Program-made: the position numbers and the translations under genes | The notes under the pieces: generated by a model | Databases searched by the model: none | Seen by the model: only the letters and a program-made list of their open reading frames with translations | What the model was told of the DNA's origin: nothing | IMG/VR virus record: IMGVR_UViG_3300042887_005053 | Location: 1-64,000 of that record | Length of the DNA stretch: 64,000 bases | Reading direction: 5' to 3' (one strand) | In this document: piece after piece, positions 9,728 to 56,370 of the stretch | Layout of the letters: the number at the start of each line of letters is the position of its first letter | Position numbering within the stretch: position 1 is the stretch's first letter

Positions 9728-11065
9728 TTAATCTACAGATTCTTCACTATCAATAAATACAAAATTACTATCATATTTACTTAAAAACTCTCTTGCTGTA
9801 TTCAATTTTGAAGTATTGTCTCTTATCCATTGTTTAGCCATTTCAAATGGTTCACATCTTAAAAGAGCTTTTTCGTAACTCTCTATACTTTTATAAGCAC
9901 TTAGTATTTCTTCTACACTCATCTTCTTTAATTCTTCTGCTTTAATCATATTCATAACAAATGAAAAATTAGAATTATTTTTAATATAACCTAAAGCATA
10001 ATCTTTTCTGGAAATATTAAGGTCTTTGAAGTGTTTATAAGCTTCATTTATTTCTTCAACTTTGTCGTTAATGGATTTTTTGACAATCTTTATTATCTTA
10101 TCGATCCTTTCGTGAGCTTCTTTTTCATCTTCTGGAATTTGTCCTAAGATATCATCAATTTTATCATCTAAAATATATCCAACTATAATATTCTCTCTAT
10201 GAATATCATCTGTTAATAAACCATGTCTTTCCATATACCATGGTGTTTTGATTTTAAAGAAAAAGTCTTTTCCAGATTTATCTTCAGCTTGAACAATAAC
10301 TCCTTCTTTGTCAACTTGTTTAGCAGTTAACTCAATCAAATTATCCAAATCCTTGAAATCATCTTCAAATGGTGCAATACGAATTGTTCCTATTTTATCT
10401 AAATAGTCTTTAATATCTAAATGTTTTCCAGTTTTGTTATCTCTCATTCTCAAAAGAATGAGGTCTTCTTCTAAGTATCTTAAAACGATTCTATTAGCTG
10501 GTGAAACATACTCAAAAATTGCAGTAATGTTATTATTTAAACACCAATCCACAAATTCTTTGATATCATTTCTTTCGCTATAGATTCTATTAATTCCATC
10601 TGCTTGATCATTATCAAATCCCATTTTAGATTTACCTAATACTTTACCGTTTGGTAACTTAATAAATGATGCTATACTACCATCTTCTTTGTTGTTAACA
10701 TATTTGATCTTATAATCTTTAACAATTGAATACATAGAGTCAGTTACTTGATTCAAGTTGAAGAACTTCTCAAGTAATAAAAATCTATTAAATAAAGATC
10801 CGTCTTTATTGAAAACAAAAGTCAATCCTCTCATCTCATAAGCTTTTACTTCTGGTTTGTTTTCTAAAGGTGAAGCAAAATCTTTATGTTGAGCAAGACG
10901 ATAATTGAATACAGAAATATTATATCCATCAATTACATACTTAGATTCATAGAAGGCAGAGTCTTCCTTAGAGCACATCTCAATGCAATCCTCATAAGTA
11001 GGAAGATAGTAAGATGTAATAGAATTAGATTCTTTTAAGTATTGGTTGAATGTGTAGATTTTCAT
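9728..11065 (-). CDS. T4 Rnl1-type RNA ligase with CTS-like N-terminus
   Basis: KFFN, KEDGS (motif I), FEYVSPANRIVLRY, EGVIV, FKIKTPWY; begins MKIYTFNQYLKES. Confidence 0.9.
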   Translation of the reverse strand: MKIYTFNQYLKESNSITSYYLPTYEDCIEMCSKEDSAFYESKYVIDGYNISVFNYRLAQHKDFASPLENKPEVKAYEMRGLTFVFNKDGSLFNRFLLLEKFFNLNQVTDSMYSIVKDYKIKYVNNKEDGSIASFIKLPNGKVLGKSKMGFDNDQADGINRIYSERNDIKEFVDWCLNNNITAIFEYVSPANRIVLRYLEEDLILLRMRDNKTGKHLDIKDYLDKIGTIRIAPFEDDFKDLDNLIELTAKQVDKEGVIVQAEDKSGKDFFFKIKTPWYMERHGLLTDDIHRENIIVGYILDDKIDDILGQIPEDEKEAHERIDKIIKIVKKSINDKVEEINEAYKHFKDLNISRKDYALGYIKNNSNFSFVMNMIKAEELKKMSVEEILSAYKSIESYEKALLRCEPFEMAKQWIRDNTSKLNTAREFLSKYDSNFVFIDSEESVD

Positions 11066-11808: not shown

Positions 11809-11811
11809 GTT

Positions 11812-12504
11812 TTAAACTTTTATAAAATCACACTTGAGTTTTGCTACAATATGATTAGATAGTTTTGATTTGCTAAGATAAGGATTTTCTTTTTCAGCTT
11901 CTCCTTCTTCATAAGTTTTTATGACACAATCTTTACCAAGAGCCCTTTCAATAGAAACATTAACATCTGACGAAAGTAAGTAATTAAATACATCAAATCT
12001 TTTATCATTAGGTTCAGTCAAAATTTCTCTAGCATAAACAACAATTCCTTCTGTTTCATGATACTCTGGATAGACTACTAAGTTTGAGAAGTCTGTATTA
12101 TTATAGTTGAAATACCTGGTCTTCTCAGTTAAGTCTTTTAAGTTTTTAAATTTCCAAGTTTTTCCTTTGATTGTGATATCAGTATTTTGTGTTTCTCTGA
12201 CTTCTATATTGTCGAATTTATCAGTTATTCTATTAATAGCAGTTCTTAACTCAGATTGATACCACTGGTATTCTTTCCAGTCCAAAGTGTGTTTCTTTTC
12301 AAGTGAAATAAATATTCTATCACCAAATTGATAAACATCATTGTCTCTGACTTTTTTCAATAGATCATATACATTTTTATTGAAGTTTTCAAACGCATTA
12401 TCATTGCAGAAAAAATCTTGATTGATCTGAAATTTATAACCAGCATCCTCAAAGTGAATTAAGGCATCTTCAATTTTATCTTTTAATTCTTGATTAAGAA
12501 GCAT
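11812..12504 (-). CDS. Hypothetical protein (start revised from 12543)
   Basis: TTTATATATA 4 nt before ATG 12504; the longer start runs through a terminator. Confidence 0.65.
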   Translation of the reverse strand: MLLNQELKDKIEDALIHFEDAGYKFQINQDFFCNDNAFENFNKNVYDLLKKVRDNDVYQFGDRIFISLEKKHTLDWKEYQWYQSELRTAINRITDKFDNIEVRETQNTDITIKGKTWKFKNLKDLTEKTRYFNYNNTDFSNLVVYPEYHETEGIVVYAREILTEPNDKRFDVFNYLLSSDVNVSIERALGKDCVIKTYEEGEAEKENPYLSKSKLSNHIVAKLKCDFIKV

Positions 12505-12515
12505 AGAGTATATAT

Positions 12516-12541
12516 AAAAAAAGACTCGATAAAATCGAGTC
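12516..12541 (-). terminator. Intrinsic terminator
   Basis: GACTCGAT-AAA-ATCGAGTC with T run on the minus strand. Confidence 0.8.
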
Positions 12542-12542
12542 A

Positions 12543-12842
12543 TTAAAATTTTTCAGATGATTTAGCTTTAGTAGTATCTGGTTTCGATTTGAAAACTGTT
12601 TTATAAACTATAACTGTATCATGTTTATTATCATAAAGTAATTTCAACTTTTTATTTTCGTCTTGAAGTGTTTTGATAGTAGAATCTTTTTGATGTAAAA
12701 TACATTCGGTTGATGGTAATTCTGGTTTATCAGATGATTGAACTTTGAAAAATACTGCTGTAGAGAATAATAGAAATGAAATAAACCCTATTGTTGAGAT
12801 TATCATTAAGGTTTTAGACATTGATTTGTTAGTTTTTGACAT
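12543..12842 (-). CDS. Single-TM coiled-coil protein
   Basis: N-terminal TM helix; TATATTTG early box at 12859-12866. Confidence 0.65.
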   Translation of the reverse strand: MSKTNKSMSKTLMIISTIGFISFLLFSTAVFFKVQSSDKPELPSTECILHQKDSTIKTLQDENKKLKLLYDNKHDTVIVYKTVFKSKPDTTKAKSSEKF

Positions 12843-13368: not shown

Positions 13369-13785
13369 TTAAAGCTTAACAATTTCTAATCCTGACTTTT
13401 CTAAAAAATTAAGTCCATCTGAGTCTTTGTAAAACTCACCATAGACTAATCTTTTTATTCCTGATTGAAGAATAAGTTTACTACAATCTTTACAAGGAGA
13501 ATGTGTAATATAAATAGTAGCATCTTTACAAGAATGTCCATTTTTAGCACACTTTAATATAGCATTTGCTTCGGCGTGTATTACATACCAATGAGTTAGA
13601 TTATCAGAATCTTCACAAACATTATCAAAACCAGTTGGTGATCCATTATGACCATCAGAGATAATCATACCATCCTTAACTATAAGTGAACCTACTTGTT
13701 TTCGAACACAATGTGAAAGTGTAGACCACTCTTTGGCCATTTTCAAATAAACTTGATCGTATCTCAGTTGTTTATTTTTTTCCAT
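13369..13785 (-). CDS. dCMP deaminase
   Basis: HAEANAI and SPCKDC zinc motifs. Confidence 0.93.
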   Translation of the reverse strand: MEKNKQLRYDQVYLKMAKEWSTLSHCVRKQVGSLIVKDGMIISDGHNGSPTGFDNVCEDSDNLTHWYVIHAEANAILKCAKNGHSCKDATIYITHSPCKDCSKLILQSGIKRLVYGEFYKDSDGLNFLEKSGLEIVKL

Positions 13786-13955
13786 ATTTTTTCGAGTTTC
13801 ATCAACCGATCAATTCTGTAGAATTGTTTTTTAAGAATTTCACCAAGTTTTTTTGAATCAAAATCAAAATTTCGATCCTTCAAATTAGAAGGAGTTGAAT
13901 TAATTTTTGACTTTAATTCGCCTAGCTTTGAATTAAATTCGTTGGTATTATCCAT
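13764..13955 (-). CDS. Small protein with C-terminal tag
   Basis: DRLMKLEKIW near the C-terminus. Confidence 0.55.
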   Translation of the reverse strand: MDNTNEFNSKLGELKSKINSTPSNLKDRNFDFDSKKLGEILKKQFYRIDRLMKLEKIWKKINN

Positions 13956-14493
13956 TTGATTTCAGAATATCACCAATAGTTAAATCAACTAAGGTAGACC
14001 TACCGAAAATTAAAACTTCGACTTTTACTTTATTCTTATCCATATCAATCCAATCAACAGTTCCTTTGAACTTAGCAAAAGGTCCAGTTACGATTTCAAC
14101 AGTTTCACCAACGATGAATTGAGTTTCAATAACATTTTTATTACTTTCTTTCTCACCGATCATTCTATCTACTTCACTTTGTTTTAAGATAATTGCTACA
14201 CCTTTATTGTCTCTAAGGATGTTAGTTGCGCCGTTTGTAGATTTAACTAAGTGAGCTACCTTATCGATAGAATTAGTTTGAACAAAAACATATCCAGGAT
14301 AAAGAACTTTTTCTTTTTGAACCTTTTTGCCTTCTTTGATATCAATTGTTAATTGAGTTGGAATTAAAAAGACAACATCTTCACCATACTCTCTTTTCAT
14401 ATCAGACTTTAATCTTTCTGAAACTGATTTTTCTCGATTGTTTTGTACTTTAACTGTGTACCAATTTTTAGCTTTTACTTCTGTTTGAATCAT
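13948..14493 (-). CDS. nusG: Transcription elongation/antitermination factor
   Basis: NGN (WYTVKV...YPGYVFV) plus KOW (GETVEIVTGPFAKFKG...IFGR). Confidence 0.92.
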   Translation of the reverse strand: MIQTEVKAKNWYTVKVQNNREKSVSERLKSDMKREYGEDVVFLIPTQLTIDIKEGKKVQKEKVLYPGYVFVQTNSIDKVAHLVKSTNGATNILRDNKGVAIILKQSEVDRMIGEKESNKNVIETQFIVGETVEIVTGPFAKFKGTVDWIDMDKNKVKVEVLIFGRSTLVDLTIGDILKSNG

Positions 14494-27542: not shown

Positions 27543-27582
27543 TTAATTTTTTATTATTAATTTTTTTACTTATATTTGTATT

Positions 27583-29401: not shown

Positions 29402-29410
29402 GGTTTTTTT
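29381..29410 (+). terminator. Intrinsic terminator
   Basis: AAAAAACCTCAGA-AAG-TCTGAGGTTTTTT. Confidence 0.88.
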
Positions 29411-29442
29411 ATTTATGAGAATATTTTTTTAATATATATTTT

Positions 29443-30313: not shown

Positions 30314-30317
30314 AAAA

Positions 30318-30349
30318 TTTGTTTTTTCGGAATTATTAACTTATATTTG
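30318..30349 (+). promoter_or_regulatory. Early promoter (Bacteroidota -33/-7)
   Basis: TTTG-N20-TATATTTG. Confidence 0.8.
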
Positions 30350-30372
30350 TATCTAATAATAAAAATTATTCT

Positions 30373-31848
30373 ATGATACTAAAGAAAGGCATTCACGAAA
30401 AACTAATGGAATCAATTCAACAAATGTTGATTGACACGAAGGTTAATTTACCGTATTACGGAAATTTCAATCTTTTCATAAACTTCCACGAAAGAAAAGA
30501 CATCGGTACTTGTGCAGTAAACATGACTAGCAAAGGAATGCAGTTCTATTACTCACCAGAATTCTTAAATCGAATTTCACAAAAAGAAGTTAATTTCATA
30601 ACTCTTCACGAAGATTTTCACTTACTTTGGAATCACCCTAAAAGAACTATTACTGGTCAGTACGATCATAAATTGTCTAATATCGCTCAAGACATGATTA
30701 TCAATCACGTCATTTGGGAAGATATTCCTTCCAACTATGTTGAGATTCCTAAAGACGAAAAAGGTCGTAACATGGCGTTATTCGTACCGAAAGAATATAC
30801 TGGTAAACTTATCTTTGAAGAACTTTACGAATGGTTGAGAGACGAAAAAGAAAAGCGTGACAGTCAGAAGAAAGAGTGTCAAAGTTGTAAAGGTACCGGT
30901 AAGAAACAAGATCAAAACGGTCAAGAACAAGATGATAAACAAGACCAAAATGGTCAAGGTCAAGACAAACAGGATCAGAACGGTCAAGGTCAAGATAAAC
31001 AAGATCAGAATGGTCACAATCACGGCGATTCAAATGAGTCTTGTCCAGATTGTCAAGGTTCTGGTAAAGAAAAAGGTCAAGGTGGTTCTGAATACGGACC
31101 TTTCGGTAAAGATCCTAAAAATGGTAAAGGCGAAATCGATACCTATTCTTTAGATCACATTTTAGATAATCTTGACACAAATCAAGGTGAATACTTAGAT
31201 GCTCACTTAGGTGACGAAGTACCAGAAGAAATGAGAGAGTCAATGGTGAAAGATGCTATGGATAGACTACAAGCTCGTGGTTTACAAGCTGGTAACATTG
31301 AACAAACTTTGAACAAACTTCGTAAACAAAGAAAAGATTACCTTCGTGAAATTAAACGTAGTGTTTCAAATATGATTTTTGGTACTGTTAAGCAAAAAAC
31401 TATTACTAAACCTAATCGTCGACAACTTAGTGGACTTAAAGGTAATCGTAAAATTAAGACCGCAATTAATGTGATTTTAGACACCTCTGGTTCAATGGGA
31501 AATACTTTTGAAAAAGTACTATCATATATTTATAGAAGTGATATTGAAGTAAACATGATTCAAGCTGACACACAAGTAAATTGGGTAGAAAAATTTATGA
31601 ATAAGAAAAAGATTGAAAGGATGAAAATTTCTGGTCTTGGTGGTACAGTTTTGAGTCCAGCAGTCGATTTTGTAGCTGATAACTTCAACCAATACAACAC
31701 TTGTATTTTGACTGATGGATATTGTGATAGTCTAGACCTCTCCAAGTTAAAGGGAAAAGTTTTGATTATATCAATTGGAGTCTCAGTACCGATCTCAAAA
31801 TCAAATGGTAAACTCAAACAAATTTGTGTTGATATAAATGATAAATAA
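30373..31848 (+). CDS. HExxH metallopeptidase-like plus vWA protein (DUF2201-like) with inserted CxxCxGxG zinc finger
   Basis: LHEDFH, NIAQDMIIN, DTSGS MIDAS, GGT, TDG. Confidence 0.85.
   Translation: MILKKGIHEKLMESIQQMLIDTKVNLPYYGNFNLFINFHERKDIGTCAVNMTSKGMQFYYSPEFLNRISQKEVNFITLHEDFHLLWNHPKRTITGQYDHKLSNIAQDMIINHVIWEDIPSNYVEIPKDEKGRNMALFVPKEYTGKLIFEELYEWLRDEKEKRDSQKKECQSCKGTGKKQDQNGQEQDDKQDQNGQGQDKQDQNGQGQDKQDQNGHNHGDSNESCPDCQGSGKEKGQGGSEYGPFGKDPKNGKGEIDTYSLDHILDNLDTNQGEYLDAHLGDEVPEEMRESMVKDAMDRLQARGLQAGNIEQTLNKLRKQRKDYLREIKRSVSNMIFGTVKQKTITKPNRRQLSGLKGNRKIKTAINVILDTSGSMGNTFEKVLSYIYRSDIEVNMIQADTQVNWVEKFMNKKKIERMKISGLGGTVLSPAVDFVADNFNQYNTCILTDGYCDSLDLSKLKGKVLIISIGVSVPISKSNGKLKQICVDINDK
30904..31017 (+). 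repeat. In-frame tandem repeat of about 30 nt (KQDQNGQGQD, about 3.7 copies)
   Basis: Degenerate AAACAAGAyCAAAAyGGTCAAGGTCAAGAy units. Confidence 0.9.
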
Positions 31849-31873
31849 AAAAGTCCAGTTTAACTGGACTTTT
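31849..31873. terminator. Bidirectional intrinsic terminator
   Basis: AAAAGTCCAGT-TTA-ACTGGACTTTT. Confidence 0.85.
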
Positions 31874-32846
31874 CCAACATTTTTAGAAATTCATCATAAT
31901 TTTTATTAATTATGAAAATAAAATTATATCCCTGATGTAAACATGATTGCTGTTTACATAGATTTTTCTCCAAGTATAAATTATAATAATATTCAGATTT
32001 AACTTCAACTATCAAATTTAAATCTTCAATATAGAAATCTGGGTGGTATGTCTTATATGAATCACCTAAGAGATACTTAATAGATGATGGTTTGGATACT
32101 TTATTTAATAATTTATTGATTTCACAAAAAACAAGAAAGTCTAATTCATAAGTTCCTTGGTAGCTTAAATTCTTGTATATTTTTGATTTGAGTTGAGACT
32201 TCTGTATTTTATTAAATATTTCTGAGTTTTGAGCAGGAAACTCATGTCCATATTTCAATAAATTAGTTTGTTTAAATTTATCATATATTTCTTTTGACTT
32301 CATACAATTATCCACACCAAATCTATCAATTAGAGTATTCATTCTTTTCGTCTTAGATTCTAATTTAGTTGATGATTTAATTGCCTTATTATGTGTTTCT
32401 GGTAGTATTATGTTGGTTTTAACACCAAACCTCTCTAACATTGTAGTTTCTCTACTATCACAAACCTCTTTTACCTTCGATGGGTTGTCGACTCCGAATT
32501 TTTCTAAAAAATATTTCTTCAGTTCAACAACTTTTTCAGTTGATTGTAGAGGGTATTTCGTACCATATTTTTCTAAATTTGTTGATTCGACTTTATCTTT
32601 AGCACAAAAATTACTACAACAATAATATCCACCGTGTGATATATTTTTATTATATTTTTTATACTGAAGTGTTTTTATTCTACCACAAACATCACACTGA
32701 GCTTCAATTCTTAGTGTAGAATTAAGACCAATATCTTTAATATCAATCATTAAATATTCTTTATTCTCTGTTTGATATCCTAACTTTCTATATCTGTGTG
32801 AATTAAATTGATTTATCTTGATCCTCAATTCCTTCGTTATTATCAT
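31860..32846 (-). CDS. Putative free-standing homing endonuclease: Zn ribbon, five [KR][YF]G repeats, PD-(D/E)xK domain
   Basis: CDVC...CSNFC; LEKYG/LEKFG/LERFG/IDRFG/LLKYG; YHPDF...IVEVKS. Confidence 0.75.
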   Translation of the reverse strand: MIITKELRIKINQFNSHRYRKLGYQTENKEYLMIDIKDIGLNSTLRIEAQCDVCGRIKTLQYKKYNKNISHGGYYCCSNFCAKDKVESTNLEKYGTKYPLQSTEKVVELKKYFLEKFGVDNPSKVKEVCDSRETTMLERFGVKTNIILPETHNKAIKSSTKLESKTKRMNTLIDRFGVDNCMKSKEIYDKFKQTNLLKYGHEFPAQNSEIFNKIQKSQLKSKIYKNLSYQGTYELDFLVFCEINKLLNKVSKPSSIKYLLGDSYKTYHPDFYIEDLNLIVEVKSEYYYNLYLEKNLCKQQSCLHQGYNFIFIINKNYDEFLKMLEKSS

Positions 32847-33060: not shown

Positions 33061-34251
33061 TTATTTGAAATCTTTATATCTAATAACACTTTCGAACTGA
33101 CCACTCAATATTTTTTCTTGTTCATCTTGTCCTTGATGACAAAGACTTACAAAGTTATCTAATATTTTGTGTGAGTTCTCAACATCTTCTGGATGAAATA
33201 AAACGCCATATCTTTCATTCTTATCATCAGCTATAGCAGCAATCATATTATCAAGCTTACCAACTACTTTATATCCTGATGGACAAGATTCTGGATAATC
33301 ATTAAACGAGAAACTTAATTTCATATTTTTAATGTCTAACCCGTTGAATAACTTACAGTTTGAATATTCGGTTAGGGTTTTGTGATCTAAAGTTAATTTG
33401 TCATTTTCTAAAATTCTAACACCTGCATTCTTACACATTGATTGTAGACCAAAACAAATACCTAAAATTGGGTTCTTAGCGACTCTAATAGCTTGTTTAG
33501 ATAGTTTATCATCAAACTGATTAATTCTGTACTCTGAACCAGTCAAAATAGTTCCTACTACTTTTTTTGTTTCGAAAGCTTTGTTTAATTCAGTTATATC
33601 AGAAACAACAAGATGTTCGATTCCTCTGGTTCTACAATATTTCAGTAGATTTTTTAAGAATCGATTTTTTTGAGGTTCAGTGTTATTTACTATTAGTAAA
33701 ACTTGATTTTGGCTCAGTGGTGTTATTTTTGCACTTTCTACGACTTGATATGAATCAGGATACTTATCCATGAAAGTAAAGTCTTTTCTTGATAATTCAA
33801 AATTAGTATTGAAACTACTAAACACCTTAATCATTGCATCTAACGATTCATCTGATAATCCAAAATGTGTATCTTCATCTGATTTAGAACCAATTCCGTC
33901 ATAAAAGTGAACTTTAACGATATTTGGTGCTTCAATTGTGAATTCATAAATAACACGATCACCGTGAGTCATATCAACATTTAATTTAATCTCATTAGTT
34001 CTGGTATCAGTAATTACATGAATATCAAAAGTCATCAAATCTGGATCACCATCAGCTAAAACATCACCACCAGTCTCATCTGGTGTATTAACGAAATAAG
34101 TAACTCTTAAAATACTGTTTTCTCTTGTGATATCAGATAAAACATAGTCATGTGTACCATAACTAGTATATAGTTGTAAATTTTTAGGAAAGTGATCTCT
34201 AATATCATCTTTCATGTAATCTAAGTTTTCGTTAAATCTTTTAATTCTCAT
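33061..34251 (-). CDS. Unknown N-domain fused to class I glutamine amidotransferase domain
   Basis: ILTGS, LGICFGLQ, FHPE triad; begins MRIKRFNEN. Confidence 0.8.
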   Translation of the reverse strand: MRIKRFNENLDYMKDDIRDHFPKNLQLYTSYGTHDYVLSDITRENSILRVTYFVNTPDETGGDVLADGDPDLMTFDIHVITDTRTNEIKLNVDMTHGDRVIYEFTIEAPNIVKVHFYDGIGSKSDEDTHFGLSDESLDAMIKVFSSFNTNFELSRKDFTFMDKYPDSYQVVESAKITPLSQNQVLLIVNNTEPQKNRFLKNLLKYCRTRGIEHLVVSDITELNKAFETKKVVGTILTGSEYRINQFDDKLSKQAIRVAKNPILGICFGLQSMCKNAGVRILENDKLTLDHKTLTEYSNCKLFNGLDIKNMKLSFSFNDYPESCPSGYKVVGKLDNMIAAIADDKNERYGVLFHPEDVENSHKILDNFVSLCHQGQDEQEKILSGQFESVIRYKDFK

Positions 34252-34252
34252 A

Positions 34253-35056
34253 TTAATACTCAATTCTTTCTACATTCTTTAGTTTCACATCATAATACTC
34301 ATTATCATATTGAACTGTTATGTTGTCAAATTCGTCAATACTAACTGGTTTTAGTGGTTCTTTTGGATCATTATCTGGTAAATCTTCAACAACTGTTGCA
34401 TAAATAATTCCATTATCATCTATACACTTGATTATATCTTCTTGTGTTATGTTATTCACTTTGAAATCTTCAAATAACATAATATATTTAAGTGATGCTT
34501 TCTCAACGATTTTGTGTCTATTTTTAATATTATCAAGTAAAGACTCGATTTCTCTAACAATTTTATTGTGTGTATTGGTTAGTCTACGATTTGATTTCAA
34601 GTTAGTGATGATGAAATTAGTTTCGATATAATATCTACTTCTAAATCCAGCTGAAGCGGCGTACATATCTGATATATTTTGAAGTCTATCACAAAGTTTA
34701 ATAGTTAAGGCATCATCACTCATATAAGTCATTTTGTTGAGTAAATAATTTGCTTTTCCTTGTTTAGTTATTTCACTTTCATCTGATGTTAGTTCTTGTA
34801 CAAGTTTTGCTACTCTACCACCAAACTTAGATTTTATTAGGTCAAATGTCACAAAGTCAACATCTTCTAAAGTATCGTGAAGAATTGCAGCTGTTCCTAA
34901 GGTTGCTCTAGTATCGAATCTTTTGAGAATACTAAATACCTTAACAACATGACCTTCGAAGTATGTAGTTGATGTGAATCTTCTTCTCATACCTTTGTGA
35001 GCATCTTTTGAGAACTTCCAAGCTTTCTGTTCTAAAGGTGTTAAAGTTATTGGCAT
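34253..35056 (-). CDS. RelA/SpoT-type HD hydrolase (small alarmone hydrolase, Mesh1-like) plus C-terminal domain
   Basis: AHKGMRR, H, AAILHDTLED, ELT, IKLCDRLQN; no synthetase domain. Confidence 0.85.
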   Translation of the reverse strand: MPITLTPLEQKAWKFSKDAHKGMRRRFTSTTYFEGHVVKVFSILKRFDTRATLGTAAILHDTLEDVDFVTFDLIKSKFGGRVAKLVQELTSDESEITKQGKANYLLNKMTYMSDDALTIKLCDRLQNISDMYAASAGFRSRYYIETNFIITNLKSNRRLTNTHNKIVREIESLLDNIKNRHKIVEKASLKYIMLFEDFKVNNITQEDIIKCIDDNGIIYATVVEDLPDNDPKEPLKPVSIDEFDNITVQYDNEYYDVKLKNVERIEY

Positions 35057-35060
35057 AGGT

Positions 35061-35161
35061 TATATATTAAATTACTTACTAAGAAAGTTAATAATACTGT
35101 ATCGTAATCATTATTTCAGTTTTATATATAGTGTATATATAAAAAATATAGCTTATTTTTG
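35061..35161. promoter_or_regulatory. Divergent promoter region
   Basis: Minus TTAATATATA 35061-35070; plus TTTATATATA 35121-35130 and early TATTTTTG 35154-35161. Confidence 0.6.
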
Positions 35162-35165
35162 TAGT

Positions 35166-36344
35166 ATGAAAATTAAAGATTATCAAGGTTTTCTTGAAGA
35201 GTTAAGTAATAAAGATATGTATGAAATTATTCCTAATTCAGTTAAAGAATTGAATAACATTTTCAAAAAATCTGGAAAGAAACTTTATGTAGTTGGTGGT
35301 GCAGTCCGTGATTTTCTAACAGGAGAAAAACCAAAAGACTTTGATCTTGCTACAGACGCACTTCCAGATGAAGTGCTAGAAATTCTTGGTCACAAATATA
35401 GAACTAACTTACAGGGTAAGGCTTTTGGTGTGGTAGTTGTTTATACTGAAGATGAACCAGCAGGAATGGAAATTGCAACTTTTAGATCAGATGTTACAAA
35501 AGGTAGAAATCCAGAAGTTAAATTAGGAGTTACAATAGAAGATGATGTCAAAAGAAGAGATCTAACTTATAACTCACTTTTTTATGACTTAGATAAAAAA
35601 GAAATTGTAGATTTAGTTGGTGGTGTTAAAGACTTAGAAGATAAAATAACTAGAATGGTTGGAGATCCGTTGGAAAGAATTGAAGAAGATTCTTTGAGGA
35701 TTTTAAGAGCATTCCGTTTTTCTGCTAGATACGGAACACCTTTGGATGAATCTTTAATTGAATCTATAAAAAAGAGAAAGCAGTTACAGAATGTCGATCC
35801 GGAATCTGGTGAAATGAAAAGAATTTCACAAGAAAGAATTTGGGAAGAAATGAAAAAAGCTTACTATCAAGCTAAGTCTTATGTTCACTACTTGGAATTT
35901 TTTAATTACTTTGACATGTGGGAAGAAGTTTTCCCAGGAGCTATTATTAATAGAGATATTGTAGAATGTCATGAACTTGTTACTTATATAGCTAACTTAT
36001 TCAAATTTGATAATAAGTCAGATTTAGAAAGCAGATTAGTAATAAACTATAAAATTGAAAGTGATATTGCTTCAAAAGTTGTTTTCTTGATAAATCTACT
36101 TGATCTAAGAACTGACAATGCTTTTGACTTATATAAACAAAAAACAAGGTCTAACTGTCAAACATCTACCATAATTGATTGGTTAGATGCTAATAACATT
36201 CATAGAAAAATATTTATAAGATTTATTGATTATGCTCCGAGTGTTTCTGCTGAAGAATTAATGAGTCAAGGCTTCAAAGGTAAAGAACTTGGTCAAAAGA
36301 TTAAAGATTTAGAGATTAAAAAATTCAAAGATTTATTAAGATGA
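35166..36344 (+). CDS. cca: Class II tRNA nucleotidyltransferase (CCA-adding enzyme family)
   Basis: VGGAVRD, DFDLAT, RRDLTYN, EDSLRILRAFRF, ISQERI; begins MKIKDYQGFLEE. Confidence 0.85.
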   Translation: MKIKDYQGFLEELSNKDMYEIIPNSVKELNNIFKKSGKKLYVVGGAVRDFLTGEKPKDFDLATDALPDEVLEILGHKYRTNLQGKAFGVVVVYTEDEPAGMEIATFRSDVTKGRNPEVKLGVTIEDDVKRRDLTYNSLFYDLDKKEIVDLVGGVKDLEDKITRMVGDPLERIEEDSLRILRAFRFSARYGTPLDESLIESIKKRKQLQNVDPESGEMKRISQERIWEEMKKAYYQAKSYVHYLEFFNYFDMWEEVFPGAIINRDIVECHELVTYIANLFKFDNKSDLESRLVINYKIESDIASKVVFLINLLDLRTDNAFDLYKQKTRSNCQTSTIIDWLDANNIHRKIFIRFIDYAPSVSAEELMSQGFKGKELGQKIKDLEIKKFKDLLR

Positions 36345-36601
36345 AAAAATTCACAGAGTCAGTAGACGACTCCGGTACAAGAGATATTGATGGAACTTGG
36401 CTACCAGAAACGCCACATGCTAAGCTTAGAAACAAGTTAGGTACTTTTTGGACTTTATCTCAGTTGATTTCGGATAAACAAAGATTTCAAACACTTATTT
36501 CATCTGATACTGGAAAAGATTTGATTGTTGATACTGCTAATCAGTGTGAGTTGAACAAAGAAAGTATTTTAGAACTAATCAAAATAATCGAAGAATTATG
36601 A
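36341..36601 (+). CDS. Small protein with CTS-like N-terminus
   Basis: MKKFTES; ATGA overlap with cca. Confidence 0.65.
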   Translation: MKKFTESVDDSGTRDIDGTWLPETPHAKLRNKLGTFWTLSQLISDKQRFQTLISSDTGKDLIVDTANQCELNKESILELIKIIEEL

Positions 36602-37338
36602 TTCATAGAGTTGAGTATTTAAAAGATATTTTAGGTAGTAATTATATTGGAATTAATGTACCGATTCAAATTGTGAGTCCATTTCTAGATAGACTTAAAA
36701 ATGTTTTAGGTGATGAATATGATGTTTATGTTAAGAATCAACAAAACAGAGATAATGGTCACTATCATATAACTGTTATCAATGTAATGGATTATAATCG
36801 ACTTTCGAAAGAAATGGGTATAGATAAATTTATTAACTCACTAGAGTCAGTTTTTGATTTTGATTTTGATGATGTTCAGTTTTTAGGACTTGGTAAAGCA
36901 CAAAAACAAGACAATAAATCGTATTTTATTGTAGTTCGTTCTGAAAAGTTACAAGAAGTCAGAAGAAAATATGGATTAAGTGAACAAGATTTTCATGTTA
37001 CTTTAGGTTTCAAGTGGAAAGATGTCTTTGGAGTAAGGAAAAATGAAATTATTAAAGAAAGTGAACCTTTCTTAAAACTTTTAAAAAAGTCATATTATAA
37101 CAATCACGAAACTTTTGATTTTGTGAAAGAAATTGAAAATTTTGAAGGTGATTCTGAGCAAGAAATTGAACCAATAGAAATCAGAGAAACTACTGCTACA
37201 TTTCGTAATGGCAAAAATGACTACATAACAGTTTCTTTGATCGATAATGAATTTAGAATCACTAATAAGTATCAAGATTTTAGTAATAAACCAATTCTAT
37301 CACATACATTAATTTCGAAAAAATTTTTAGATATATAA
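36598..37338 (+). CDS. 2H phosphoesterase
   Basis: Two HxT motifs: YHITV and FHVTLG. Confidence 0.85.
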   Translation: MIHRVEYLKDILGSNYIGINVPIQIVSPFLDRLKNVLGDEYDVYVKNQQNRDNGHYHITVINVMDYNRLSKEMGIDKFINSLESVFDFDFDDVQFLGLGKAQKQDNKSYFIVVRSEKLQEVRRKYGLSEQDFHVTLGFKWKDVFGVRKNEIIKESEPFLKLLKKSYYNNHETFDFVKEIENFEGDSEQEIEPIEIRETTATFRNGKNDYITVSLIDNEFRITNKYQDFSNKPILSHTLISKKFLDI

Positions 37339-37356: not shown

Positions 37357-37650
37357 ATGTTAGGTAAATTTTATAGTCTTGACGAATGTTCAAATAAAGA
37401 CAATGTATTTGAATATTTAGAAGAATTATCAGCTGATAGCAAAATTTCATTTCAAACAGTTGATTATGATGTAATTAAAATTAAAGACTTATCTCTTTCA
37501 GTAAAAGATCAAAAAGAACTTCTAAACTTCTTTGATAAAAATGATGTAATAGAATACGCCGATTACGAGAGTTATTCTTCTGAAGAAGATATTGACGAAG
37601 ACGATGAATACGGTGACTTTGACGATTATGATGAAGATGAAGACTATTAA
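37357..37650 (+). CDS. Protein with very acidic C-terminus
   Basis: D/E-rich tail. Confidence 0.65.
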   Translation: MLGKFYSLDECSNKDNVFEYLEELSADSKISFQTVDYDVIKIKDLSLSVKDQKELLNFFDKNDVIEYADYESYSSEEDIDEDDEYGDFDDYDEDEDY

Positions 37651-38195: not shown

Positions 38196-38198
38196 AAA

Positions 38199-38307
38199 TT
38201 TGTTATTTCAATAATTTTTCTTATATTTGTATTAAGTAATTGAACTGGAAACAGTTAAAGATTACTTAAAATAAATTTGGAATATTGGAAAGTATTCCTT
38301 ATCTTTG
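38199..38307 (+). promoter_or_regulatory. Tandem early promoters enclosing a GNRA hairpin
   Basis: TTTG-N19-TATATTTG (38199-38229) and TTTG-N20-TATCTTTG (38276-38307). Confidence 0.8.
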
Positions 38308-38336
38308 TAAAACAATAACACTAAAACTCTAAAAAT

Positions 38337-38960: not shown

Positions 38961-38980
38961 TCTCCTTTTTTTCTGTAAAA

Positions 38981-39012
38981 TTTGGAAAATTAAAAATCAT
39001 TACTTATATTTG
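38981..39012 (+). promoter_or_regulatory. Early promoter
   Basis: TTTG-N20-TATATTTG, followed by TAAAACAATAA as at 38308. Confidence 0.8.
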
Positions 39013-39040
39013 TAAAACAATAATACTTAAAAAAGAAAAT

Positions 39041-40183
39041 ATGACAAAATTTATTGATCTCTCTCACATTTCTGATTTCAAAACAATGCCAAATGAAATT
39101 CGAGAAAAAATGGAAACACTTACTGATCGTGAGCGTAAGTATTTTATGACTATGTGGCCAAAGTCTGGTGTGATGTATATCACTTCTAAACCTGGTATCG
39201 CTAAGTCAGCGATGGCTCGTGAAATCGCTAGTAAGATGGGTTTCCGTTATCTTGATGTTCGTTTGTCAATGGTAGACGAAACTGATGTTGGTTTGTATCC
39301 TAATGTGTCAAGTATTGACGGTGTTAAATGTCTTGACTTCGTTGTACCTCGTTGGGCAATTGAGGCTAACAAACAACCCACCATCATTCACTTCGAAGAG
39401 TTGAACCGAGCTCAATTACCTGTTCGTAATGCGGCTCTCCAGATTCTACTTGATCGTCAAATCGGTACAGATTTCAAATTCAACGACACAGTTTTGATGA
39501 TGGCCTCTGGTAACCTTGGTGACGAAGATGGTACTGATGTAGAAGAATTCGATAACGCACTTAACAACCGATTGATTCACTTCTCTCATACACTTGGTGT
39601 TGATGAATGGATTAACTCTTTCGCTAAAGAGAACTGTCATAGTACAATCGTTAGTTATATCAGAGCTTATCCTGAGAAACTTTACCAAAATCCAACCGAG
39701 AACACTAAAGCTTTTGCTACACCTCGTTCTTGGGAGTTTTTGAGTAACTTCATCGTCTACAACTTCGGTAAAGATGCTTCTCCAAAGCAGTTCTTACCTT
39801 ACCTACAAGAAGTAGCACACGGATACATTGGAAACGGAGCTCAAAGCTTTATGAAGTATTGTCAAGAAATGATTAATATCAGTATCCAAGATATTATCAA
39901 CAACTATGACAAGATTGAAAAAGAGTTGGATAAATACAACCGAGACAAAAACTCAGAGTTGATCCAATCTTTGAAAGAGTTTGAAGTGTCTAAGTTCACT
40001 GATGATCAAATTCAGAATGTCACTAAGTTCTTGAAGCGTGTTGGTGATGATGAATTGACGGCTTACTTACTACACATTCTCGACTCTGGAGTTGATGTGT
40101 CAAATCCGAAAGTGAAGAAGTTCATGCAGACATTCAAAGATGTCTTAGTAAGAATCAAAGAGATCAATAAGCCTCAAAAGTAA
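39041..40183 (+). CDS. MoxR/dynein-like AAA+ ATPase
   Basis: SKPGIAKS (Walker A variant), IIHFEELNRA (Walker B), ASGN, ALNNR, TPRSW. Confidence 0.88.
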   Translation: MTKFIDLSHISDFKTMPNEIREKMETLTDRERKYFMTMWPKSGVMYITSKPGIAKSAMAREIASKMGFRYLDVRLSMVDETDVGLYPNVSSIDGVKCLDFVVPRWAIEANKQPTIIHFEELNRAQLPVRNAALQILLDRQIGTDFKFNDTVLMMASGNLGDEDGTDVEEFDNALNNRLIHFSHTLGVDEWINSFAKENCHSTIVSYIRAYPEKLYQNPTENTKAFATPRSWEFLSNFIVYNFGKDASPKQFLPYLQEVAHGYIGNGAQSFMKYCQEMINISIQDIINNYDKIEKELDKYNRDKNSELIQSLKEFEVSKFTDDQIQNVTKFLKRVGDDELTAYLLHILDSGVDVSNPKVKKFMQTFKDVLVRIKEINKPQK

Positions 40184-45538: not shown

Positions 45539-45585
45539 TTTTTTTATTTAAAATATTTAACTTATATTTGTAAAAATCTAAATTT

Positions 45586-55416: not shown

Positions 55417-56370
55417 ATGAATATAAAAATTTTTTCTGGTTCCAATTATAAAGATTTAGGTAAGCAAATCAGTGAACATTTAGGTATCGAAATGGGTAGT
55501 CTGAGAATTGATAAATTCAAAGACGGTGAGATACTACCTTGTTTTTTAGAATCAATCAGAGATTTAGACATATTCTTTGTTAACAGTACGGACTCTTCTG
55601 AGTCTATTATGGAGACTCTTTTAGTAACTGATGCCGCAAAAAGAGCTGGTTGTAAATCATTTACCTTGGTCTCACCGTATTCTGGTTATTCAAGGCAGGA
55701 CAAAACAGATCATTTGAGATCTTCAATTGGAAGTAAGCTTTTAGCCGATATACTTGAAAAAGCCGGTGTCTCAAGATTAATAACTATAGACTTACACGCT
55801 AGTGCAATTCAAGGATTTTATAACATACCAGTGATTCACTTAAATGGAAACAAGGTATCGAGTAACTATATTAAATCTCTTAATTTAGATAATCTCTGTA
55901 TAGTTGCACCAGATCAAGGTGCTGTCAAAAGAGCTTCTGATTTTTGCAAAGCTTTTCCAGAGTCTTCTTTTGCTATGATTAATAAAAGAAGGCTTAAACC
56001 AAATGAAATTCATTCAATGGAGCTTGTTGGAGATGTTACTAATAAGAATGTAATAATTGTAGATGATATGGCTGATACTTTAGGTACTATGGTAAAAGCA
56101 TCAGACTTACTTTTATCTAAAGGTGCTACATCTGTAAGATGTGTAGCGACTCACGGAATATTGAGTGGTGAAGCACTAAATAATCTTGAAAACTCACAGA
56201 TAACAGAGTTAGTTGTTTCTGATACTATTAACTCAACTCTTGATAAAGAAGTAGCAATGAGTAATTCTATACACAGAATTAAAGTAATAAGTTGTTCATA
56301 TCTATTAGCTAAATCAATTTCGGCTCTTTATCAAAAGAGGAGTATTCACGAAATAAATGTAATTGAATAA
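55417..56370 (+). CDS. prs: Ribose-phosphate pyrophosphokinase
   Basis: FKDGE, YSRQDK, DLHASAIQGFY, APDQG, VDDMADT. Confidence 0.93.
   Translation: MNIKIFSGSNYKDLGKQISEHLGIEMGSLRIDKFKDGEILPCFLESIRDLDIFFVNSTDSSESIMETLLVTDAAKRAGCKSFTLVSPYSGYSRQDKTDHLRSSIGSKLLADILEKAGVSRLITIDLHASAIQGFYNIPVIHLNGNKVSSNYIKSLNLDNLCIVAPDQGAVKRASDFCKAFPESSFAMINKRRLKPNEIHSMELVGDVTNKNVIIVDDMADTLGTMVKASDLLLSKGATSVRCVATHGILSGEALNNLENSQITELVVSDTINSTLDKEVAMSNSIHRIKVISCSYLLAKSISALYQKRSIHEINVIE

What the first reader, a model, noticed from the sequence alone, without database searches (positions are those of the whole stretch)
33061..37338. Divergent alarmone hydrolase / CCA enzyme / 2H phosphoesterase locus: a candidate tRNA 3'-end rescue module
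Seen: a stand-alone RelA/SpoT HD hydrolase is transcribed back-to-back with a CCA-adding enzyme, a small protein and a 2H phosphoesterase. Four of the five genes in the locus carry CTS-like motifs, and cca has both a late motif and an early TAnnTTTG box. Established: toxSAS enzymes such as the anti-phage CapRel pyrophosphorylate the tRNA 3'-CCA, and small alarmone hydrolases can counter toxSAS. 2H enzymes act on 2',3'-cyclic phosphates, and CCA enzymes rebuild trimmed ends. Inference: a kit that unblocks, heals and re-extends tRNA 3' ends damaged by host defences, partly pre-loaded in the virion. Alternatives: the hydrolase only removes (p)ppGpp, or the 2H protein is an Acb1-like cyclic-nucleotide degrader.
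Basis: partly seen in the sequence, partly recalled or inferred. Interest (0 to 1): 0.83.

Follow-up and report, generated by a model that had tools for sequence, protein, structure and literature searches.

The report
Megaphage tRNA-end enzymes beside alarmone hydrolase
A giant uncultured phage carries a tRNA CCA-adding enzyme and an RNA-end cyclic phosphodiesterase in one operon, next to a ppGpp-type hydrolase; the first two travel together across its relatives, but the hydrolase is linked only in this sub-lineage, so a three-enzyme tRNA rescue kit is plausible but unproven.

Summary
All five genes are real and intact. On the minus strand lie a Mesh1-like RelA/SpoT hydrolase (HD_4) fused to an 80-aa domain, and a GuaA-type glutamine amidotransferase fusion. 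On the plus strand lie a class II tRNA nucleotidyltransferase, an 86-aa ORF and a 2H-SAK phosphoesterase, with overlapping stop/start codons.

The window belongs to the >630-kb megaphage clade of LR745206/LR756502. In 10 of 15 related loci cca lies upstream of 2H-SAK on the same strand. The slot between them is an insertion hotspot, and the 86-aa ORF recurs in only two loci.

The hydrolase is not a fixed partner. In LR745206 and LR756502 its homologue lies about 50 and 110 kb away, beside a T4 Rnl1-type RNA ligase. Elsewhere it sits by PTH2/CCA/Thg1, RNase P protein or tRNA synthetases, but also by guanylate kinase and adenylosuccinate synthase.

2H-SAK relatives are fused to polynucleotide-kinase and PNKP-phosphatase domains, which supports RNA end healing. 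One is fused to a Cap15 cyclic-dinucleotide receptor. Ten phage tRNA genes in relatives encode no CCA, so plain tRNA maturation is a sufficient role for cca. CCA-adding versus poly(A) polymerase is unresolved.

A T4-CTS-like N-terminal motif is truly enriched clade-wide, but only two of the five genes clearly carry it at the N-terminus.

Verdict: interpretation partly supported; a new variant of known phage tRNA-repair sets.

The parts
33061..34251 (-). 396-aa protein (400 aa from the upstream TTG). It joins an unknown ~200-aa N-terminal domain, starting with the CTS-like peptide MRIKRFNENL, to a GuaA-type class I glutamine amidotransferase with GICFGLQ and HPE catalytic motifs. It is co-operonic with the hydrolase.
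   Evidence: Pfam GATase 4.8e-14 (aa 202-371). TIGR00888 guaA_Nterm 1.1e-20, below cut-off. The N-terminal domain is a separate 178-aa gene in L004. The HD+GATase pair recurs in L024/L025.
34253..35056 (-). 267-aa small-alarmone-hydrolase-type RelA/SpoT HD domain (about 34610-35023), fused to a conserved 80-aa domain (about 34256-34492).
   Evidence: HD_4 1e-12. Best sequence matches among solved structures are Mesh1 3nqw, 3nr1 and 5vxa, with the H..HD..ED..D..N residues aligned. The C-terminal domain is a separate 79-84-aa ORF in about 12 related loci. 313 homologues were found; most are 193-196 aa and stand-alone.
35057..35165 (.). Divergent promoter spacer. It holds TTATATATTAAATT (35060-35073) abutting the HD start, two inverted [G/C]TATATATAAAA copies (35120-35131 minus, 35133-35144 plus), and a Bacteroidota-type -7 box TATTTTTG (35154-35161) 12 nt before the cca ATG.
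   Evidence: The spacer is near-invariant against L024/L025 although the flanking proteins are only 72-77% identical.
35166..36344 (+). 392-aa class II tRNA nucleotidyltransferase, probably CCA-adding, with an appended N-terminal helix MKIKDYQGFLEE.
   Evidence: PolyA_pol 2.9e-32. Motifs GGAVRD/DFD, RRD, EDSLR and ERIWEE are invariant in the family. AF2 model pLDDT 85, with low confidence (50-61) for residues 1-20. Foldseek: human mitochondrial CCA enzyme 1.2e-15, TM 0.62-0.66; E. coli PAP 4.6e-15, TM 0.55-0.59.
36341..36601 (+). 86-aa ORF with no family hit, translationally coupled on both sides. It occupies a variable insertion slot.
   Evidence: No Pfam, PHROG or NCBIfam hit. Homologues are seen only in L006 and L014. 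Other loci carry a 319-aa ORF, a T9SS-CTD-like ORF or up to 3.3 kb of other genes in this slot.
36598..37338 (+). 246-aa 2H-SAK phosphoesterase (2H domain about aa 1-150) plus a C-terminal four-strand and helix domain of unknown function (about aa 190-244).
   Evidence: PF22547 3.8e-24. H57-x-T59 and H133-x-T135 are invariant in 29 sequences. AF2 pLDDT 90. BFVD best match is a phage SAK 2H protein at 2.3e-7; Acb1 scores only E 0.05-0.07. PDB best match is E. coli LigT at E 0.055.
37357..37650 (+). 97-aa protein with a poly-acidic D/E/Y tail. It follows 2H-SAK in 15 of the 17 related loci checked by BLASTP, plus two more found by tblastn.
9728..11065 (-). 445-aa T4 Rnl1-type RNA ligase elsewhere in the window. 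In relatives this gene is the neighbour of the stand-alone hydrolase.
   Evidence: RNA_lig_T4_1 2.2e-21 and T4_Rnl1_C 2.2e-4. SAH-Rnl1 neighbourhoods in L019-L023.

Best explanation
The locus is part of a tRNA-centred island of a >600-kb megaphage, probably with a Bacteroidota host.

The conserved working unit is the plus-strand operon: cca, a variable insert, 2H-SAK and an acidic protein.
- Shown: the nucleotidyltransferase is a complete class II tRNA nucleotidyltransferase.
- Shown: the 2H protein keeps both catalytic HxT motifs and belongs to the 2H clade that is elsewhere fused to RNA ligase, polynucleotide kinase and PNKP phosphatase.
- Shown: ten tRNA genes found in related loci carry no encoded CCA.
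- Inferred: cca adds CCA to phage tRNAs and rebuilds trimmed ends.
- Inferred: 2H-SAK opens the 2',3'-cyclic phosphates left by metal-independent host tRNases, so that ends can be re-extended by cca or sealed by the phage Rnl1 ligase at 9728-11065.

The minus-strand Mesh1-like hydrolase is an accessory that moved here in one sub-lineage by fusion to a resident 80-aa gene. It most likely hydrolyses 3'-pyrophosphate esters: (p)ppGpp and (p)ppApp, and possibly pyrophosphorylated tRNA-CCA. It could also supply the phosphatase step that a 2H product still needs. Whether the three enzymes act on the same tRNA molecules is not shown.
For: - Domain calls (3, 4, 38) and invariant catalytic residues (29, 40, 79).
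- cca lies upstream of 2H on the same strand in L001, 2, 5, 6, 7, 9, 13, 14, 15 and 16 at 44-65% aa identity, and again in L024/25 and L032.
- 2H-SAK fusions: AAA_33 kinase+2H, and 2H+HAD_PNKP. Fungal and giant-virus SAK proteins combine RNA_ligase, PTP-SAK and AAA_33.
- 0 of 10 tRNA genes in relatives encode CCA. tRNA genes sit in the same island in L001, L007 and L015.
- SAH neighbours in other clade members: Rnl1 plus an Rnl2-like ligase; PTH2, CCA, Thg1 and tmRNA; RNase P protein plus an RNA ligase; GlnRS-type synthetase.
- SAHs, including MESH1 and a phage enzyme, de-pyrophosphorylate tRNA.
Against: - The SAH is 50-110 kb away from cca/2H in LR745206.1 and LR756502.1.
- Other SAH neighbourhoods point to purine metabolism: adenylate kinase, guanylate kinase, NT5C, adenylosuccinate synthase, and here a GuaA-type GATase.
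- 2H persists without a nearby cca in L004 and L010-12, and in LR756504.1 it sits by NDK and aldehyde dehydrogenase.
- All the cca-2H loci belong to one clade, so their synteny may be inherited rather than selected.
- These genomes are rich in translation genes, so adjacency has a high background. By my rough estimate, 18-37% of this window lies within 2-5 kb of a tRNA-related gene.
- By analogy with E. coli ThpR (from memory), a 2H product would be a 2'-phosphate that still blocks extension, and no dedicated phosphatase or polynucleotide kinase was found among the window ORFs scanned.
Confidence: 0.45

Rival explanations
1. There is no joint pathway. The three enzymes are neighbours by descent in a gene-dense translation/nucleotide island and work independently. 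On this view cca only matures the phage's many CCA-less tRNAs. The hydrolase only removes (p)ppGpp/(p)ppApp, to block the stringent response and keep purine pools flowing. 2H-SAK serves the Rnl1 ligase pathway or some other substrate.
For: - The SAH is unlinked in the closest complete genomes.
- SAH contexts include Gmk, NT5C, AdSS and ADK, and here a GuaA-type GATase in the same operon.
- The tRNA genes lack CCA.
- The variable slot between cca and 2H, and the loss of cca in L004 and L010-12, argue against tight coupling.
- A jumbo-phage review treats the HD-alarmone PDEase, 2H and CCA enzymes as separate functions.
Against: - The cca-to-2H order and strand are kept despite repeated insertions between them.
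- The SAH has landed next to tRNA-processing genes in at least four different arrangements.
Confidence: 0.33
2. The 2H protein is an Acb1-like counter-defence enzyme that degrades cyclic oligonucleotide immune signals (CBASS or similar), not RNA ends.
For: - One 2H-SAK relative is fused to the Cap15 transmembrane and cyclic-dinucleotide receptor domains (P0509).
- Acb1 clusters and models appear as distant look-alikes (score 0.88; E 0.05-0.07, prob 0.93-0.94).
- Both families use the same HxT/HxT chemistry.
Against: - The Pfam Acb1 model gives no hit at E<=0.01, while 2H-SAK scores 85.8 bits.
- The nearest structural matches are SAK-type proteins, including multidomain RNA-repair proteins.
- Other fusions are with polynucleotide kinase and PNKP phosphatase domains.
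- The gene sits in a tRNA island.
Confidence: 0.12
3. The nucleotidyltransferase is a poly(A) polymerase or an A-adding/CC-adding enzyme rather than a full CCA-adding enzyme.
For: - The best NCBIfam score is the pcnB subfamily (158.9 bits) against 144.2 for CCA tRNA nucleotidyltransferase; both are below cut-off.
- E. coli PAP is nearly as close as CCA enzymes in the PDB sequence and fold searches.
Against: - The top sequence and fold hits are CCA-adding enzymes, with slightly higher TM (0.62-0.66 against 0.55-0.59).
- The PHROG family is annotated tRNA nucleotidyltransferase.
- The phage tRNAs need CCA.
- The C-terminal motif SAEELMSQGFKGKELG resembles the tail motif of Bacillus-type CCA enzymes (from memory, not tested).
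Confidence: 0.1

Closest known systems
Small alarmone hydrolases of the RelA/SpoT homologue family (Mesh1/MESH1, ATfaRel, phage SSU5 PaSpo)
   Same: A hydrolase-only HD_4 domain of about 170 aa with the conserved H, HD, ED and D..N residues. The closest solved sequences are Mesh1. Members are shown to hydrolyse (p)ppGpp and to remove the tRNA 3'-pyrophosphate.
   Different: It is fused to an extra 80-aa domain and is co-operonic with a GATase fusion. Its activity and substrate are untested. Most clade relatives are 193-196-aa stand-alone proteins located elsewhere in the genome.
E. coli multifunctional CCA-adding/repair enzyme (nucleotidyltransferase with a C-terminal HD domain having 2',3'-cyclic phosphodiesterase, 2'-nucleotidase and phosphatase activities; from memory: Yakunin et al. 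2004)
   Same: It combines CCA addition with the removal of blocking phosphates at the tRNA 3' end. That is the logic proposed here for cca plus 2H plus HD.
   Different: Here the activities would sit on three separate proteins. The HD is of the RelA/SpoT type, not the CCA-enzyme type. The phage enzyme has no HD domain (the PRK10885 match covers only the head, model positions 2-196).
Swiss Army Knife (SAK) RNA repair proteins and Trl1-type healing modules (kinase plus 2H cyclic phosphodiesterase plus ligase)
   Same: The 2H domain is a member of Pfam 2H-SAK. Relatives are fused to AAA_33 kinase, HAD_PNKP, PTP-SAK and RNA ligase domains.
   Different: Here the 2H domain stands alone with an unrelated C-terminal domain. 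Its operon partner is a CCA-type nucleotidyltransferase rather than a ligase or kinase.
T4 Pnkp-Rnl1 tRNA anticodon-nick repair
   Same: The window encodes an Rnl1-type ligase. In relatives the hydrolase sits beside that ligase.
   Different: No Pnkp was found among the window ORFs scanned. The end-healing enzymes would be 2H-SAK and possibly the HD hydrolase.
T4 capsid targeting sequence (MKTYQEFIAE) of internal proteins
   Same: cca starts MKIKDYQGFLEE and the GATase starts MRIKRFNENL. The pattern is enriched about 6-9-fold at the N-termini of clade genes.
   Different: There is no evidence of packaging or cleavage. The motif also occurs on proteins not expected in capsids. The 2H protein, and the hydrolase at its N-terminus, lack it.

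Membership tests
Small alarmone hydrolase (RSH hydrolase-only) | HD_4 (RelA/SpoT-type) hydrolase domain without a synthetase domain | tested here: met
   PF13328 1e-12. TIGR00691 and PRK11092 match only the N-terminal hydrolase part. No RelA_SpoT synthetase hit.
Small alarmone hydrolase (RSH hydrolase-only) | Conserved catalytic residues (R..H, HD, ED, D..N) | tested here: met
   The alignment to Mesh1 3nqw/3nr1 shows hkgmRRR...H, LHDtlEDvD and klcDrlqN aligned.
Small alarmone hydrolase (RSH hydrolase-only) | Single-domain protein of about 180-200 aa | tested here: not met
   267 aa. Residues 189-267 are a second domain that is a separate gene in relatives.
Small alarmone hydrolase (RSH hydrolase-only) | Hydrolysis of (p)ppGpp, (p)ppApp or tRNA 3'-pyrophosphate | not testable with these tools
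   Needs an enzyme assay.
Class II CCA-adding enzyme | Pol-beta head with GGxVRD, DxD, RRD, EDxxR and ERxxxE motifs | tested here: met
   PF01743 2.9e-32. The motif residues are invariant in 14 homologues.
Class II CCA-adding enzyme | Head-neck-body-tail fold | tested here: met
   The AF2 model aligns over about 380-420 columns with human, Planococcus, Thermotoga and Bacillus CCA enzymes, E 1e-15 to 1e-13.
Class II CCA-adding enzyme | Separation from poly(A) polymerase and A-adding enzymes | tested here: inconclusive
   pcnB 158.9 bits against CCA 144.2 bits. PAP 3aqm E 4.6e-15 against CCA 1.2e-15.
2H phosphoesterase, 2H-SAK clade | Two H-x-T/S motifs | tested here: met
   H57-I-T59 and H133-V-T135 are invariant in 29 sequences.
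2H phosphoesterase, 2H-SAK clade | Match to PF22547 above the gathering score, and a 2H fold | tested here: met
   85.8 bits against a 27-bit cut-off. BFVD SAK 2H protein 2.3e-7, TM 0.68 on the target. PDB LigT scores only E 0.055.
2H phosphoesterase, 2H-SAK clade | Fusion to RNA ligase, kinase or phosphatase as in SAK proteins proper | tested here: not met
   Stand-alone 2H domain plus an unknown C-terminal domain. The fusions exist in relatives.
Acb1 anti-CBASS phosphodiesterase | Match to the Acb1 family model | tested here: not met
   No PF23474 hit at E<=0.01. Foldseek to Acb1 models gives E 0.05-0.07.
T4-type capsid targeting sequence | N-terminal ~10-aa peptide like MKTYQEFIAE ending in an L/I-x-E site | tested here: inconclusive
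   cca MKIKDYQGFLEE fits. GATase fits partly. HD carries it only internally. 2H does not match, and orf86 did not match my pattern.
T4-type capsid targeting sequence | Protein present in virions and cleaved by the prohead protease | not testable with these tools
   Needs virion proteomics.

The most novel reading that the evidence does not exclude
In megaphages the Mesh1-like hydrolase is not mainly an alarmone scavenger. It would be an RNA 3'-(pyro)phosphatase that has been recruited repeatedly into tRNA repair sets, together with CCA-adding enzyme, 2H-SAK, Rnl1, RNase P protein, PTH2 and Thg1. These would form a modular counter-defence against toxSAS/CapRel-type tRNA pyrophosphorylation and against 3'-end tRNases. 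Part of the set (cca and the GATase fusion) would be delivered in the capsid through a T4-like targeting peptide.
Probability: 0.15. Interest if true: 0.75.

Novelty: new variant of a known kind. Interest (0 to 1): 0.45.

Why it matters
If the three enzymes do cooperate, this would be a phage-borne pathway that unblocks, heals and rebuilds tRNA 3' ends. It would extend T4-type anticodon repair to the acceptor end. It would also give a natural context for the tRNA de-pyrophosphorylation shown for MESH1, ATfaRel and, in co-expression, phage SSU5 PaSpo. The repeated placement of the hydrolase next to different tRNA-processing genes makes this directly testable with four purified proteins and defined tRNA substrates. 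If they do not cooperate, the locus is an ordinary piece of the large translation and nucleotide gene complement already described for huge phages.

Tried and rejected
- A profile search of solved structures with the 2H family gave only spurious heat-shock-factor hits.
- Foldseek of the 2H model against the PDB was weak: LigT at E 0.055. The PUR-alpha resemblance of the C-terminal domain has prob about 0.1 and was not relied on.
- Atlas searches with the GATase N-terminal domain and the 80-aa domain returned nothing usable.
- The window has no tRNA or tmRNA gene and no Rfam hit.
- The sigma-70 promoter scan was no better than shuffles, as expected for a Bacteroidota-type host. No relevant terminators were found.
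- The exact motif GTATATATAAAA is only marginally enriched: 6 found against 2.1 expected.
- SAH neighbourhoods in cultured Vibrio, Burkholderia, Erwinia and Ochrobactrum phages are mostly 'hypothetical' and uninformative.
- Three distant 2H-SAK look-ups fell on contigs too short for context.
- The Burroughs & Aravind 2016 RNA-repair paper that defined SAK is not held in the library, so statements about it rest on memory and on Pfam names.
- I considered stop-codon recoding. It is not needed here: 94% of the window is covered by standard-code ORFs.

Full report
**What is there**

The window is AT-rich (about 28% GC). It is the first 64 kb of the 204-kb IMG/VR contig IMGVR_UViG_3300042887_005053.

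At 33061-37338 there are five intact standard-code ORFs.

Minus strand:
- A 267-aa protein (34253-35056) has a RelA/SpoT-type HD_4 domain (1e-12, aa 12-149).
- One nucleotide after its stop comes a 396-aa protein (33061-34251). Its C-terminal half is a class I, GuaA-like glutamine amidotransferase.

Plus strand, after a 109-bp divergent spacer:
- A 392-aa class II nucleotidyltransferase (PolyA_pol head 2.9e-32; PHROG tRNA nucleotidyltransferase 1.3e-58).
- An 86-aa ORF with no family hit.
- A 246-aa 2H-SAK phosphoesterase (3.8e-24). Each of these genes overlaps the next by 4 nt.
- The operon continues with a 97-aa acidic protein and an IscA-like protein.

The gene-level observation is therefore correct.

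**The individual proteins**

- Hydrolase. By sequence it is closest, among solved structures, to Drosophila and human Mesh1 (5e-12 to 2e-10). Other small alarmone hydrolases follow. The catalytic H, HD, ED and D..N residues are aligned.
- Hydrolase fusion. Residues 189-267 are a second domain. In about a dozen related loci it is a separate 79-84-aa gene starting MKW[IV]xLFEDFK.
- 2H protein. Both HxT motifs are invariant in 29 homologues. The AF2 model (pLDDT 90) shows a 2H domain plus a C-terminal sheet-and-helix domain.
- 2H structural neighbours. The nearest is a phage 'Swiss Army Knife 2H' protein (2.3e-7). Multidomain giant-virus proteins come next. Acb1 models score only E 0.05-0.07. E. 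coli LigT is the best PDB match, but weak.
- Nucleotidyltransferase. All class II motifs are invariant. The full head-neck-body-tail model matches CCA-adding enzymes at 1e-15.
- CCA-adding versus poly(A) polymerase. E. coli poly(A) polymerase is almost as close (4.6e-15). NCBIfam scores pcnB slightly above CCA, both below cut-off. The two cannot be separated with these tools.

**Relatives and synteny**

The nearest GenBank records are LR745206.1 (635 kb) and LR756502.1 (642 kb). These are members of the >630-kb megaphage group from freshwater and subsurface samples.

I fetched 14 IMG/VR loci with the 2H protein, one of which (L003) is the window itself, plus the two GenBank loci. That gives 15 related loci. 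They share this backbone:

DUF2201/VWA ... 80-aa gene(-) ... cca(+) ... 2H-SAK(+), acidic protein ... p207, (tRNA genes), MoxR-type AAA

- cca lies upstream of 2H on the same strand in ten of the 15 loci (L001, 2, 5, 6, 7, 9, 13, 14, 15, 16). It does so again in L024/25 and in the fragmented-ORF contig L032.
- cca is absent within 10 kb in L004 and L010-12. L008 is cut by the contig end.
- The slot between cca and 2H is highly variable. It holds the 86-aa ORF here and in two other loci. Elsewhere it holds a 319-aa ORF, a T9SS-sorting-domain-like ORF, three small opposite-strand ORFs, or 2-3.5 kb of other genes.
- The small protein is therefore not a component of any conserved module. The acidic protein that follows 2H recurs in nearly all of these loci.

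**The hydrolase is mobile**

- Only the window, L005 (a 680-aa HD+80aa+467aa fusion) and the window's close relatives L024/25 have the HD domain at this locus.
- In LR745206.1 the HD homologue (46% identity) lies at 468 kb, while cca/2H lie at 516-519 kb.
- In LR756502.1 the HD homologue lies at 488 kb, against 597-599 kb for cca/2H.

Yet in those genomes, and in L021-23, the stand-alone 195-aa hydrolase is divergent from an operon ending in a T4 Rnl1-type RNA ligase. In L019 an Rnl2-like ligase also lies 2.5 kb away.

Further neighbourhoods of the hydrolase:
- In the 484-kb phage LR756508.1 it sits among PTH2, DUF2828/DUF7788, a CCA enzyme, Thg1 and a tmRNA.
- In L037 it abuts an RNase P protein gene, with an RNA ligase 4.7 kb away.
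- In L038 a GlnRS-type synthetase is 1.5 kb away.
- Against this, L030, L031, L038 and L039 show adenylosuccinate synthase, guanylate kinase, NT5C and CoaE nearby.
- An adenylate kinase sits between the hydrolase and Rnl1.
- Here the operon partner is a GuaA-type amidotransferase.

The contexts are thus mixed: tRNA processing and purine nucleotide metabolism.

I made a rough background estimate from this window. About 18% of positions lie within 2 kb of a tRNA-related gene, and about 37% within 5 kb. Against that, the tRNA association is suggestive (about 5 of 8 arrangements within about 2 kb). I would not call it established.

**Bearing on function**

- 2H-SAK has 1153 representative clusters. 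Among multidomain members I found AAA_33 kinase+2H, 2H+HAD_PNKP phosphatase, and Cap15-TM+cyclic-dinucleotide-receptor+2H.
- Fungal SAK proteins combine RNA ligase, PTP-SAK and AAA_33.
- Most of this supports RNA end healing. The Cap15 fusion keeps the cyclic-nucleotide alternative alive.
- Ten tRNA genes found in related loci all lack an encoded CCA. The related marine megaphage Mar_Mega_1 has 50 tRNAs. The phage therefore has an ordinary need for CCA addition.
- The window itself carries an Rnl1-type ligase at 9728-11065. I found no Pnkp-like kinase or phosphatase among the ORFs scanned.
- The literature confirms that toxSAS enzymes pyrophosphorylate tRNA-CCA. It also confirms that MESH1, ATfaRel and phage SSU5 PaSpo reverse this.
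- A comparative review of jumbo phages already lists the HD-alarmone phosphodiesterase, 2H enzymes and CCA-adding enzymes as separate conflict or repair functions.

**Motifs**

- A pattern fitted after seeing the data, [KR].?[FY][NQEKYI][EQSDGK][FYNALS] within the first 14 residues, occurs in 13 of 87 window genes. It occurs in only 1.7% of internal 14-residue windows.
- In independent related loci it occurs in 27 of 268 genes, against 1.5% internally.
- The enrichment is real, though the p-values are inflated by the post-hoc choice of pattern.
- In this locus it is clear for cca. There residues 1-20 are an appended helix of low confidence in the model, and the peptide is conserved across homologues. 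It is also clear for the amidotransferase.
- It is internal in the hydrolase, at the fusion junction. orf86 (MKKFTES) did not match the pattern, and 2H did not match it either.
- Packaging into virions is pure inference.

Two intergenic motif classes exist.
- The first is an extended Bacteroidota-type -7 box, (C/A)TTAT[ACT]TTTGTA. A core TAnnTTTG box occurs within 80 nt upstream of 18 of 87 genes, against about 6.5 expected. cca has one at 35154-35161.
- The second is an AATATATA/TATATATA element, found in 14 of 41 intergenic segments. It sits directly upstream of the hydrolase and, in two inverted copies, upstream of cca.
- The whole spacer is almost invariant in a relative whose proteins are only 72-77% identical. 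Only the 'nn' positions of the box differ.
- The second class precedes tail-fibre and baseplate genes, but also both topoisomerase II subunits. 'Late' is therefore unproven.
- The second class co-occurs weakly with the N-terminal peptide motif (odds ratio 4, one-sided p = 0.03).

**Verdict**

The conserved, probably functional pair is cca with 2H-SAK, together with its acidic follower. This pair sits in a tRNA island. It is best read as tRNA 3'-end maturation and healing, working alongside the phage Rnl1 ligase.

The Mesh1-like hydrolase is a mobile accessory that joined this locus in one sub-lineage. Its repeated appearance next to tRNA-processing genes makes a role on tRNA 3'-(pyro)phosphate ends worth testing. 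A plain alarmone or purine-pool role is about equally consistent with the data.

All three families, and the idea that phage SAHs counter toxSAS, are already known. What is new is this combination, the two fusions, and the neighbourhood pattern.

Noticed in passing
window-wide, e.g. 3380, 4695, 17601(-), 29443, 33061(-), 35166, 53070(-); also loci L001-L016: About 10-15% of genes in this megaphage clade start with a peptide like M-x-[IL]-K-[KR]-[FY]-N/x-E/x-[FL]. This resembles the T4 capsid targeting sequence MKTYQEFIAE and is 6-9-fold enriched over internal positions. Whole paralogous families in L001/L002 start MKHLKRFNEEL.
   Followed up: partly
window intergenic regions, e.g. 27543-27582, 30314-30372, 38196-38336, 38961-39040, 45539-45585; and 2718-2821, 29402-29442, 35057-35075: There are two distinct promoter-like motif classes. 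One is an extended Bacteroidota -7 box, CTTAT[ACT]TTTGTA. The other is a TTAATATATA element, often within 5-15 nt of the ATG, which suggests leaderless or very short leaders. The second class precedes tail-fibre, baseplate and topoisomerase genes.
   Followed up: partly
window 9728-11065 (-): A T4 Rnl1-type RNA ligase (RNA_lig_T4_1 plus T4_Rnl1_C). In relatives the stand-alone hydrolase, an adenylate kinase and a Y4mA_C-domain gene sit beside it. Here two unannotated genes (11062-12543) take that place.
   Followed up: partly
window 37357-37650 (+): A 97-aa protein with a conserved N-terminal 65 aa and a D/E/Y-rich tail. It follows 2H-SAK in nearly all related loci and is a more constant partner of 2H than cca is. 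A possible nucleic-acid mimic or regulator; not investigated.
   Followed up: no
window 36341-36601 and the equivalent slot in L001, L002, L005, L024: The gap between cca and 2H-SAK is an insertion hotspot. It holds an 86-aa ORF, a 319-aa ORF, a 116-aa ORF that looks like a type IX secretion sorting domain by eye (a hint of a Bacteroidota host; not run against Pfam), small HTH ORFs, or several kb of other genes.
   Followed up: partly
window 31860-32846 (-): A DUF7487 / homing-endonuclease-like gene sits between the DUF2201/VWA gene and the amidotransferase. Related endonuclease genes occur at different places in L002, L015, L016 and L024. They may drive the local rearrangements.
   Followed up: no
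window 30373-31848 (+) and 39041-40183 (+): A DUF2201 metallopeptidase/VWA protein and a MoxR-like AAA ATPase flank the whole island in nearly all relatives. They look like a split partner pair around a variable tRNA-related region. Relatives carry tRNA-Met, Leu and Arg genes just before the ATPase.
   Followed up: partly
window 35217-35219 (Met18 of cca): Met18 is nearly invariant. Several database homologues are called from it (374-376 aa), so a shorter isoform lacking the N-terminal peptide is possible. The TAnnTTTG box only 12 nt upstream of the first ATG would place the transcript start very near that ATG.
   Followed up: no
L017 (LR756508.1 78000-96000): A dense tRNA/translation rescue island in a 484-kb phage. 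It holds an R2K ATP-grasp protein, PTH2, the SAH, a split DUF2828/DUF7788 (VWA-like) protein, a CCA enzyme, an unknown 334-aa protein, Thg1, a trypsin-like protease, a CYTH-like ORF and a tmRNA.
   Followed up: partly
L032 (374-kb JGI contig): It has the same synteny (tRNA-synt_1b, DUF2201, PolyA_pol, 2H-SAK, CoaE), but the genes are broken into many short ORFs in the standard code. This suggests stop-codon reassignment in that relative.
   Followed up: no
window 6089-7972 (+), 13369-14493 (-), 55417-56370 (+): A host-like gene complement: an Hsp70-looking ORF by its N-terminal sequence (not scanned; relatives have HSP70 with GrpE and DnaJ), dCMP deaminase and a NusG-like protein. A pooled scan also found PRPP synthetase, rhomboid and UvdE families, which I did not map to individual ORFs (the 55417-56370 assignment for PRPP synthetase is a guess).
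   Followed up: no
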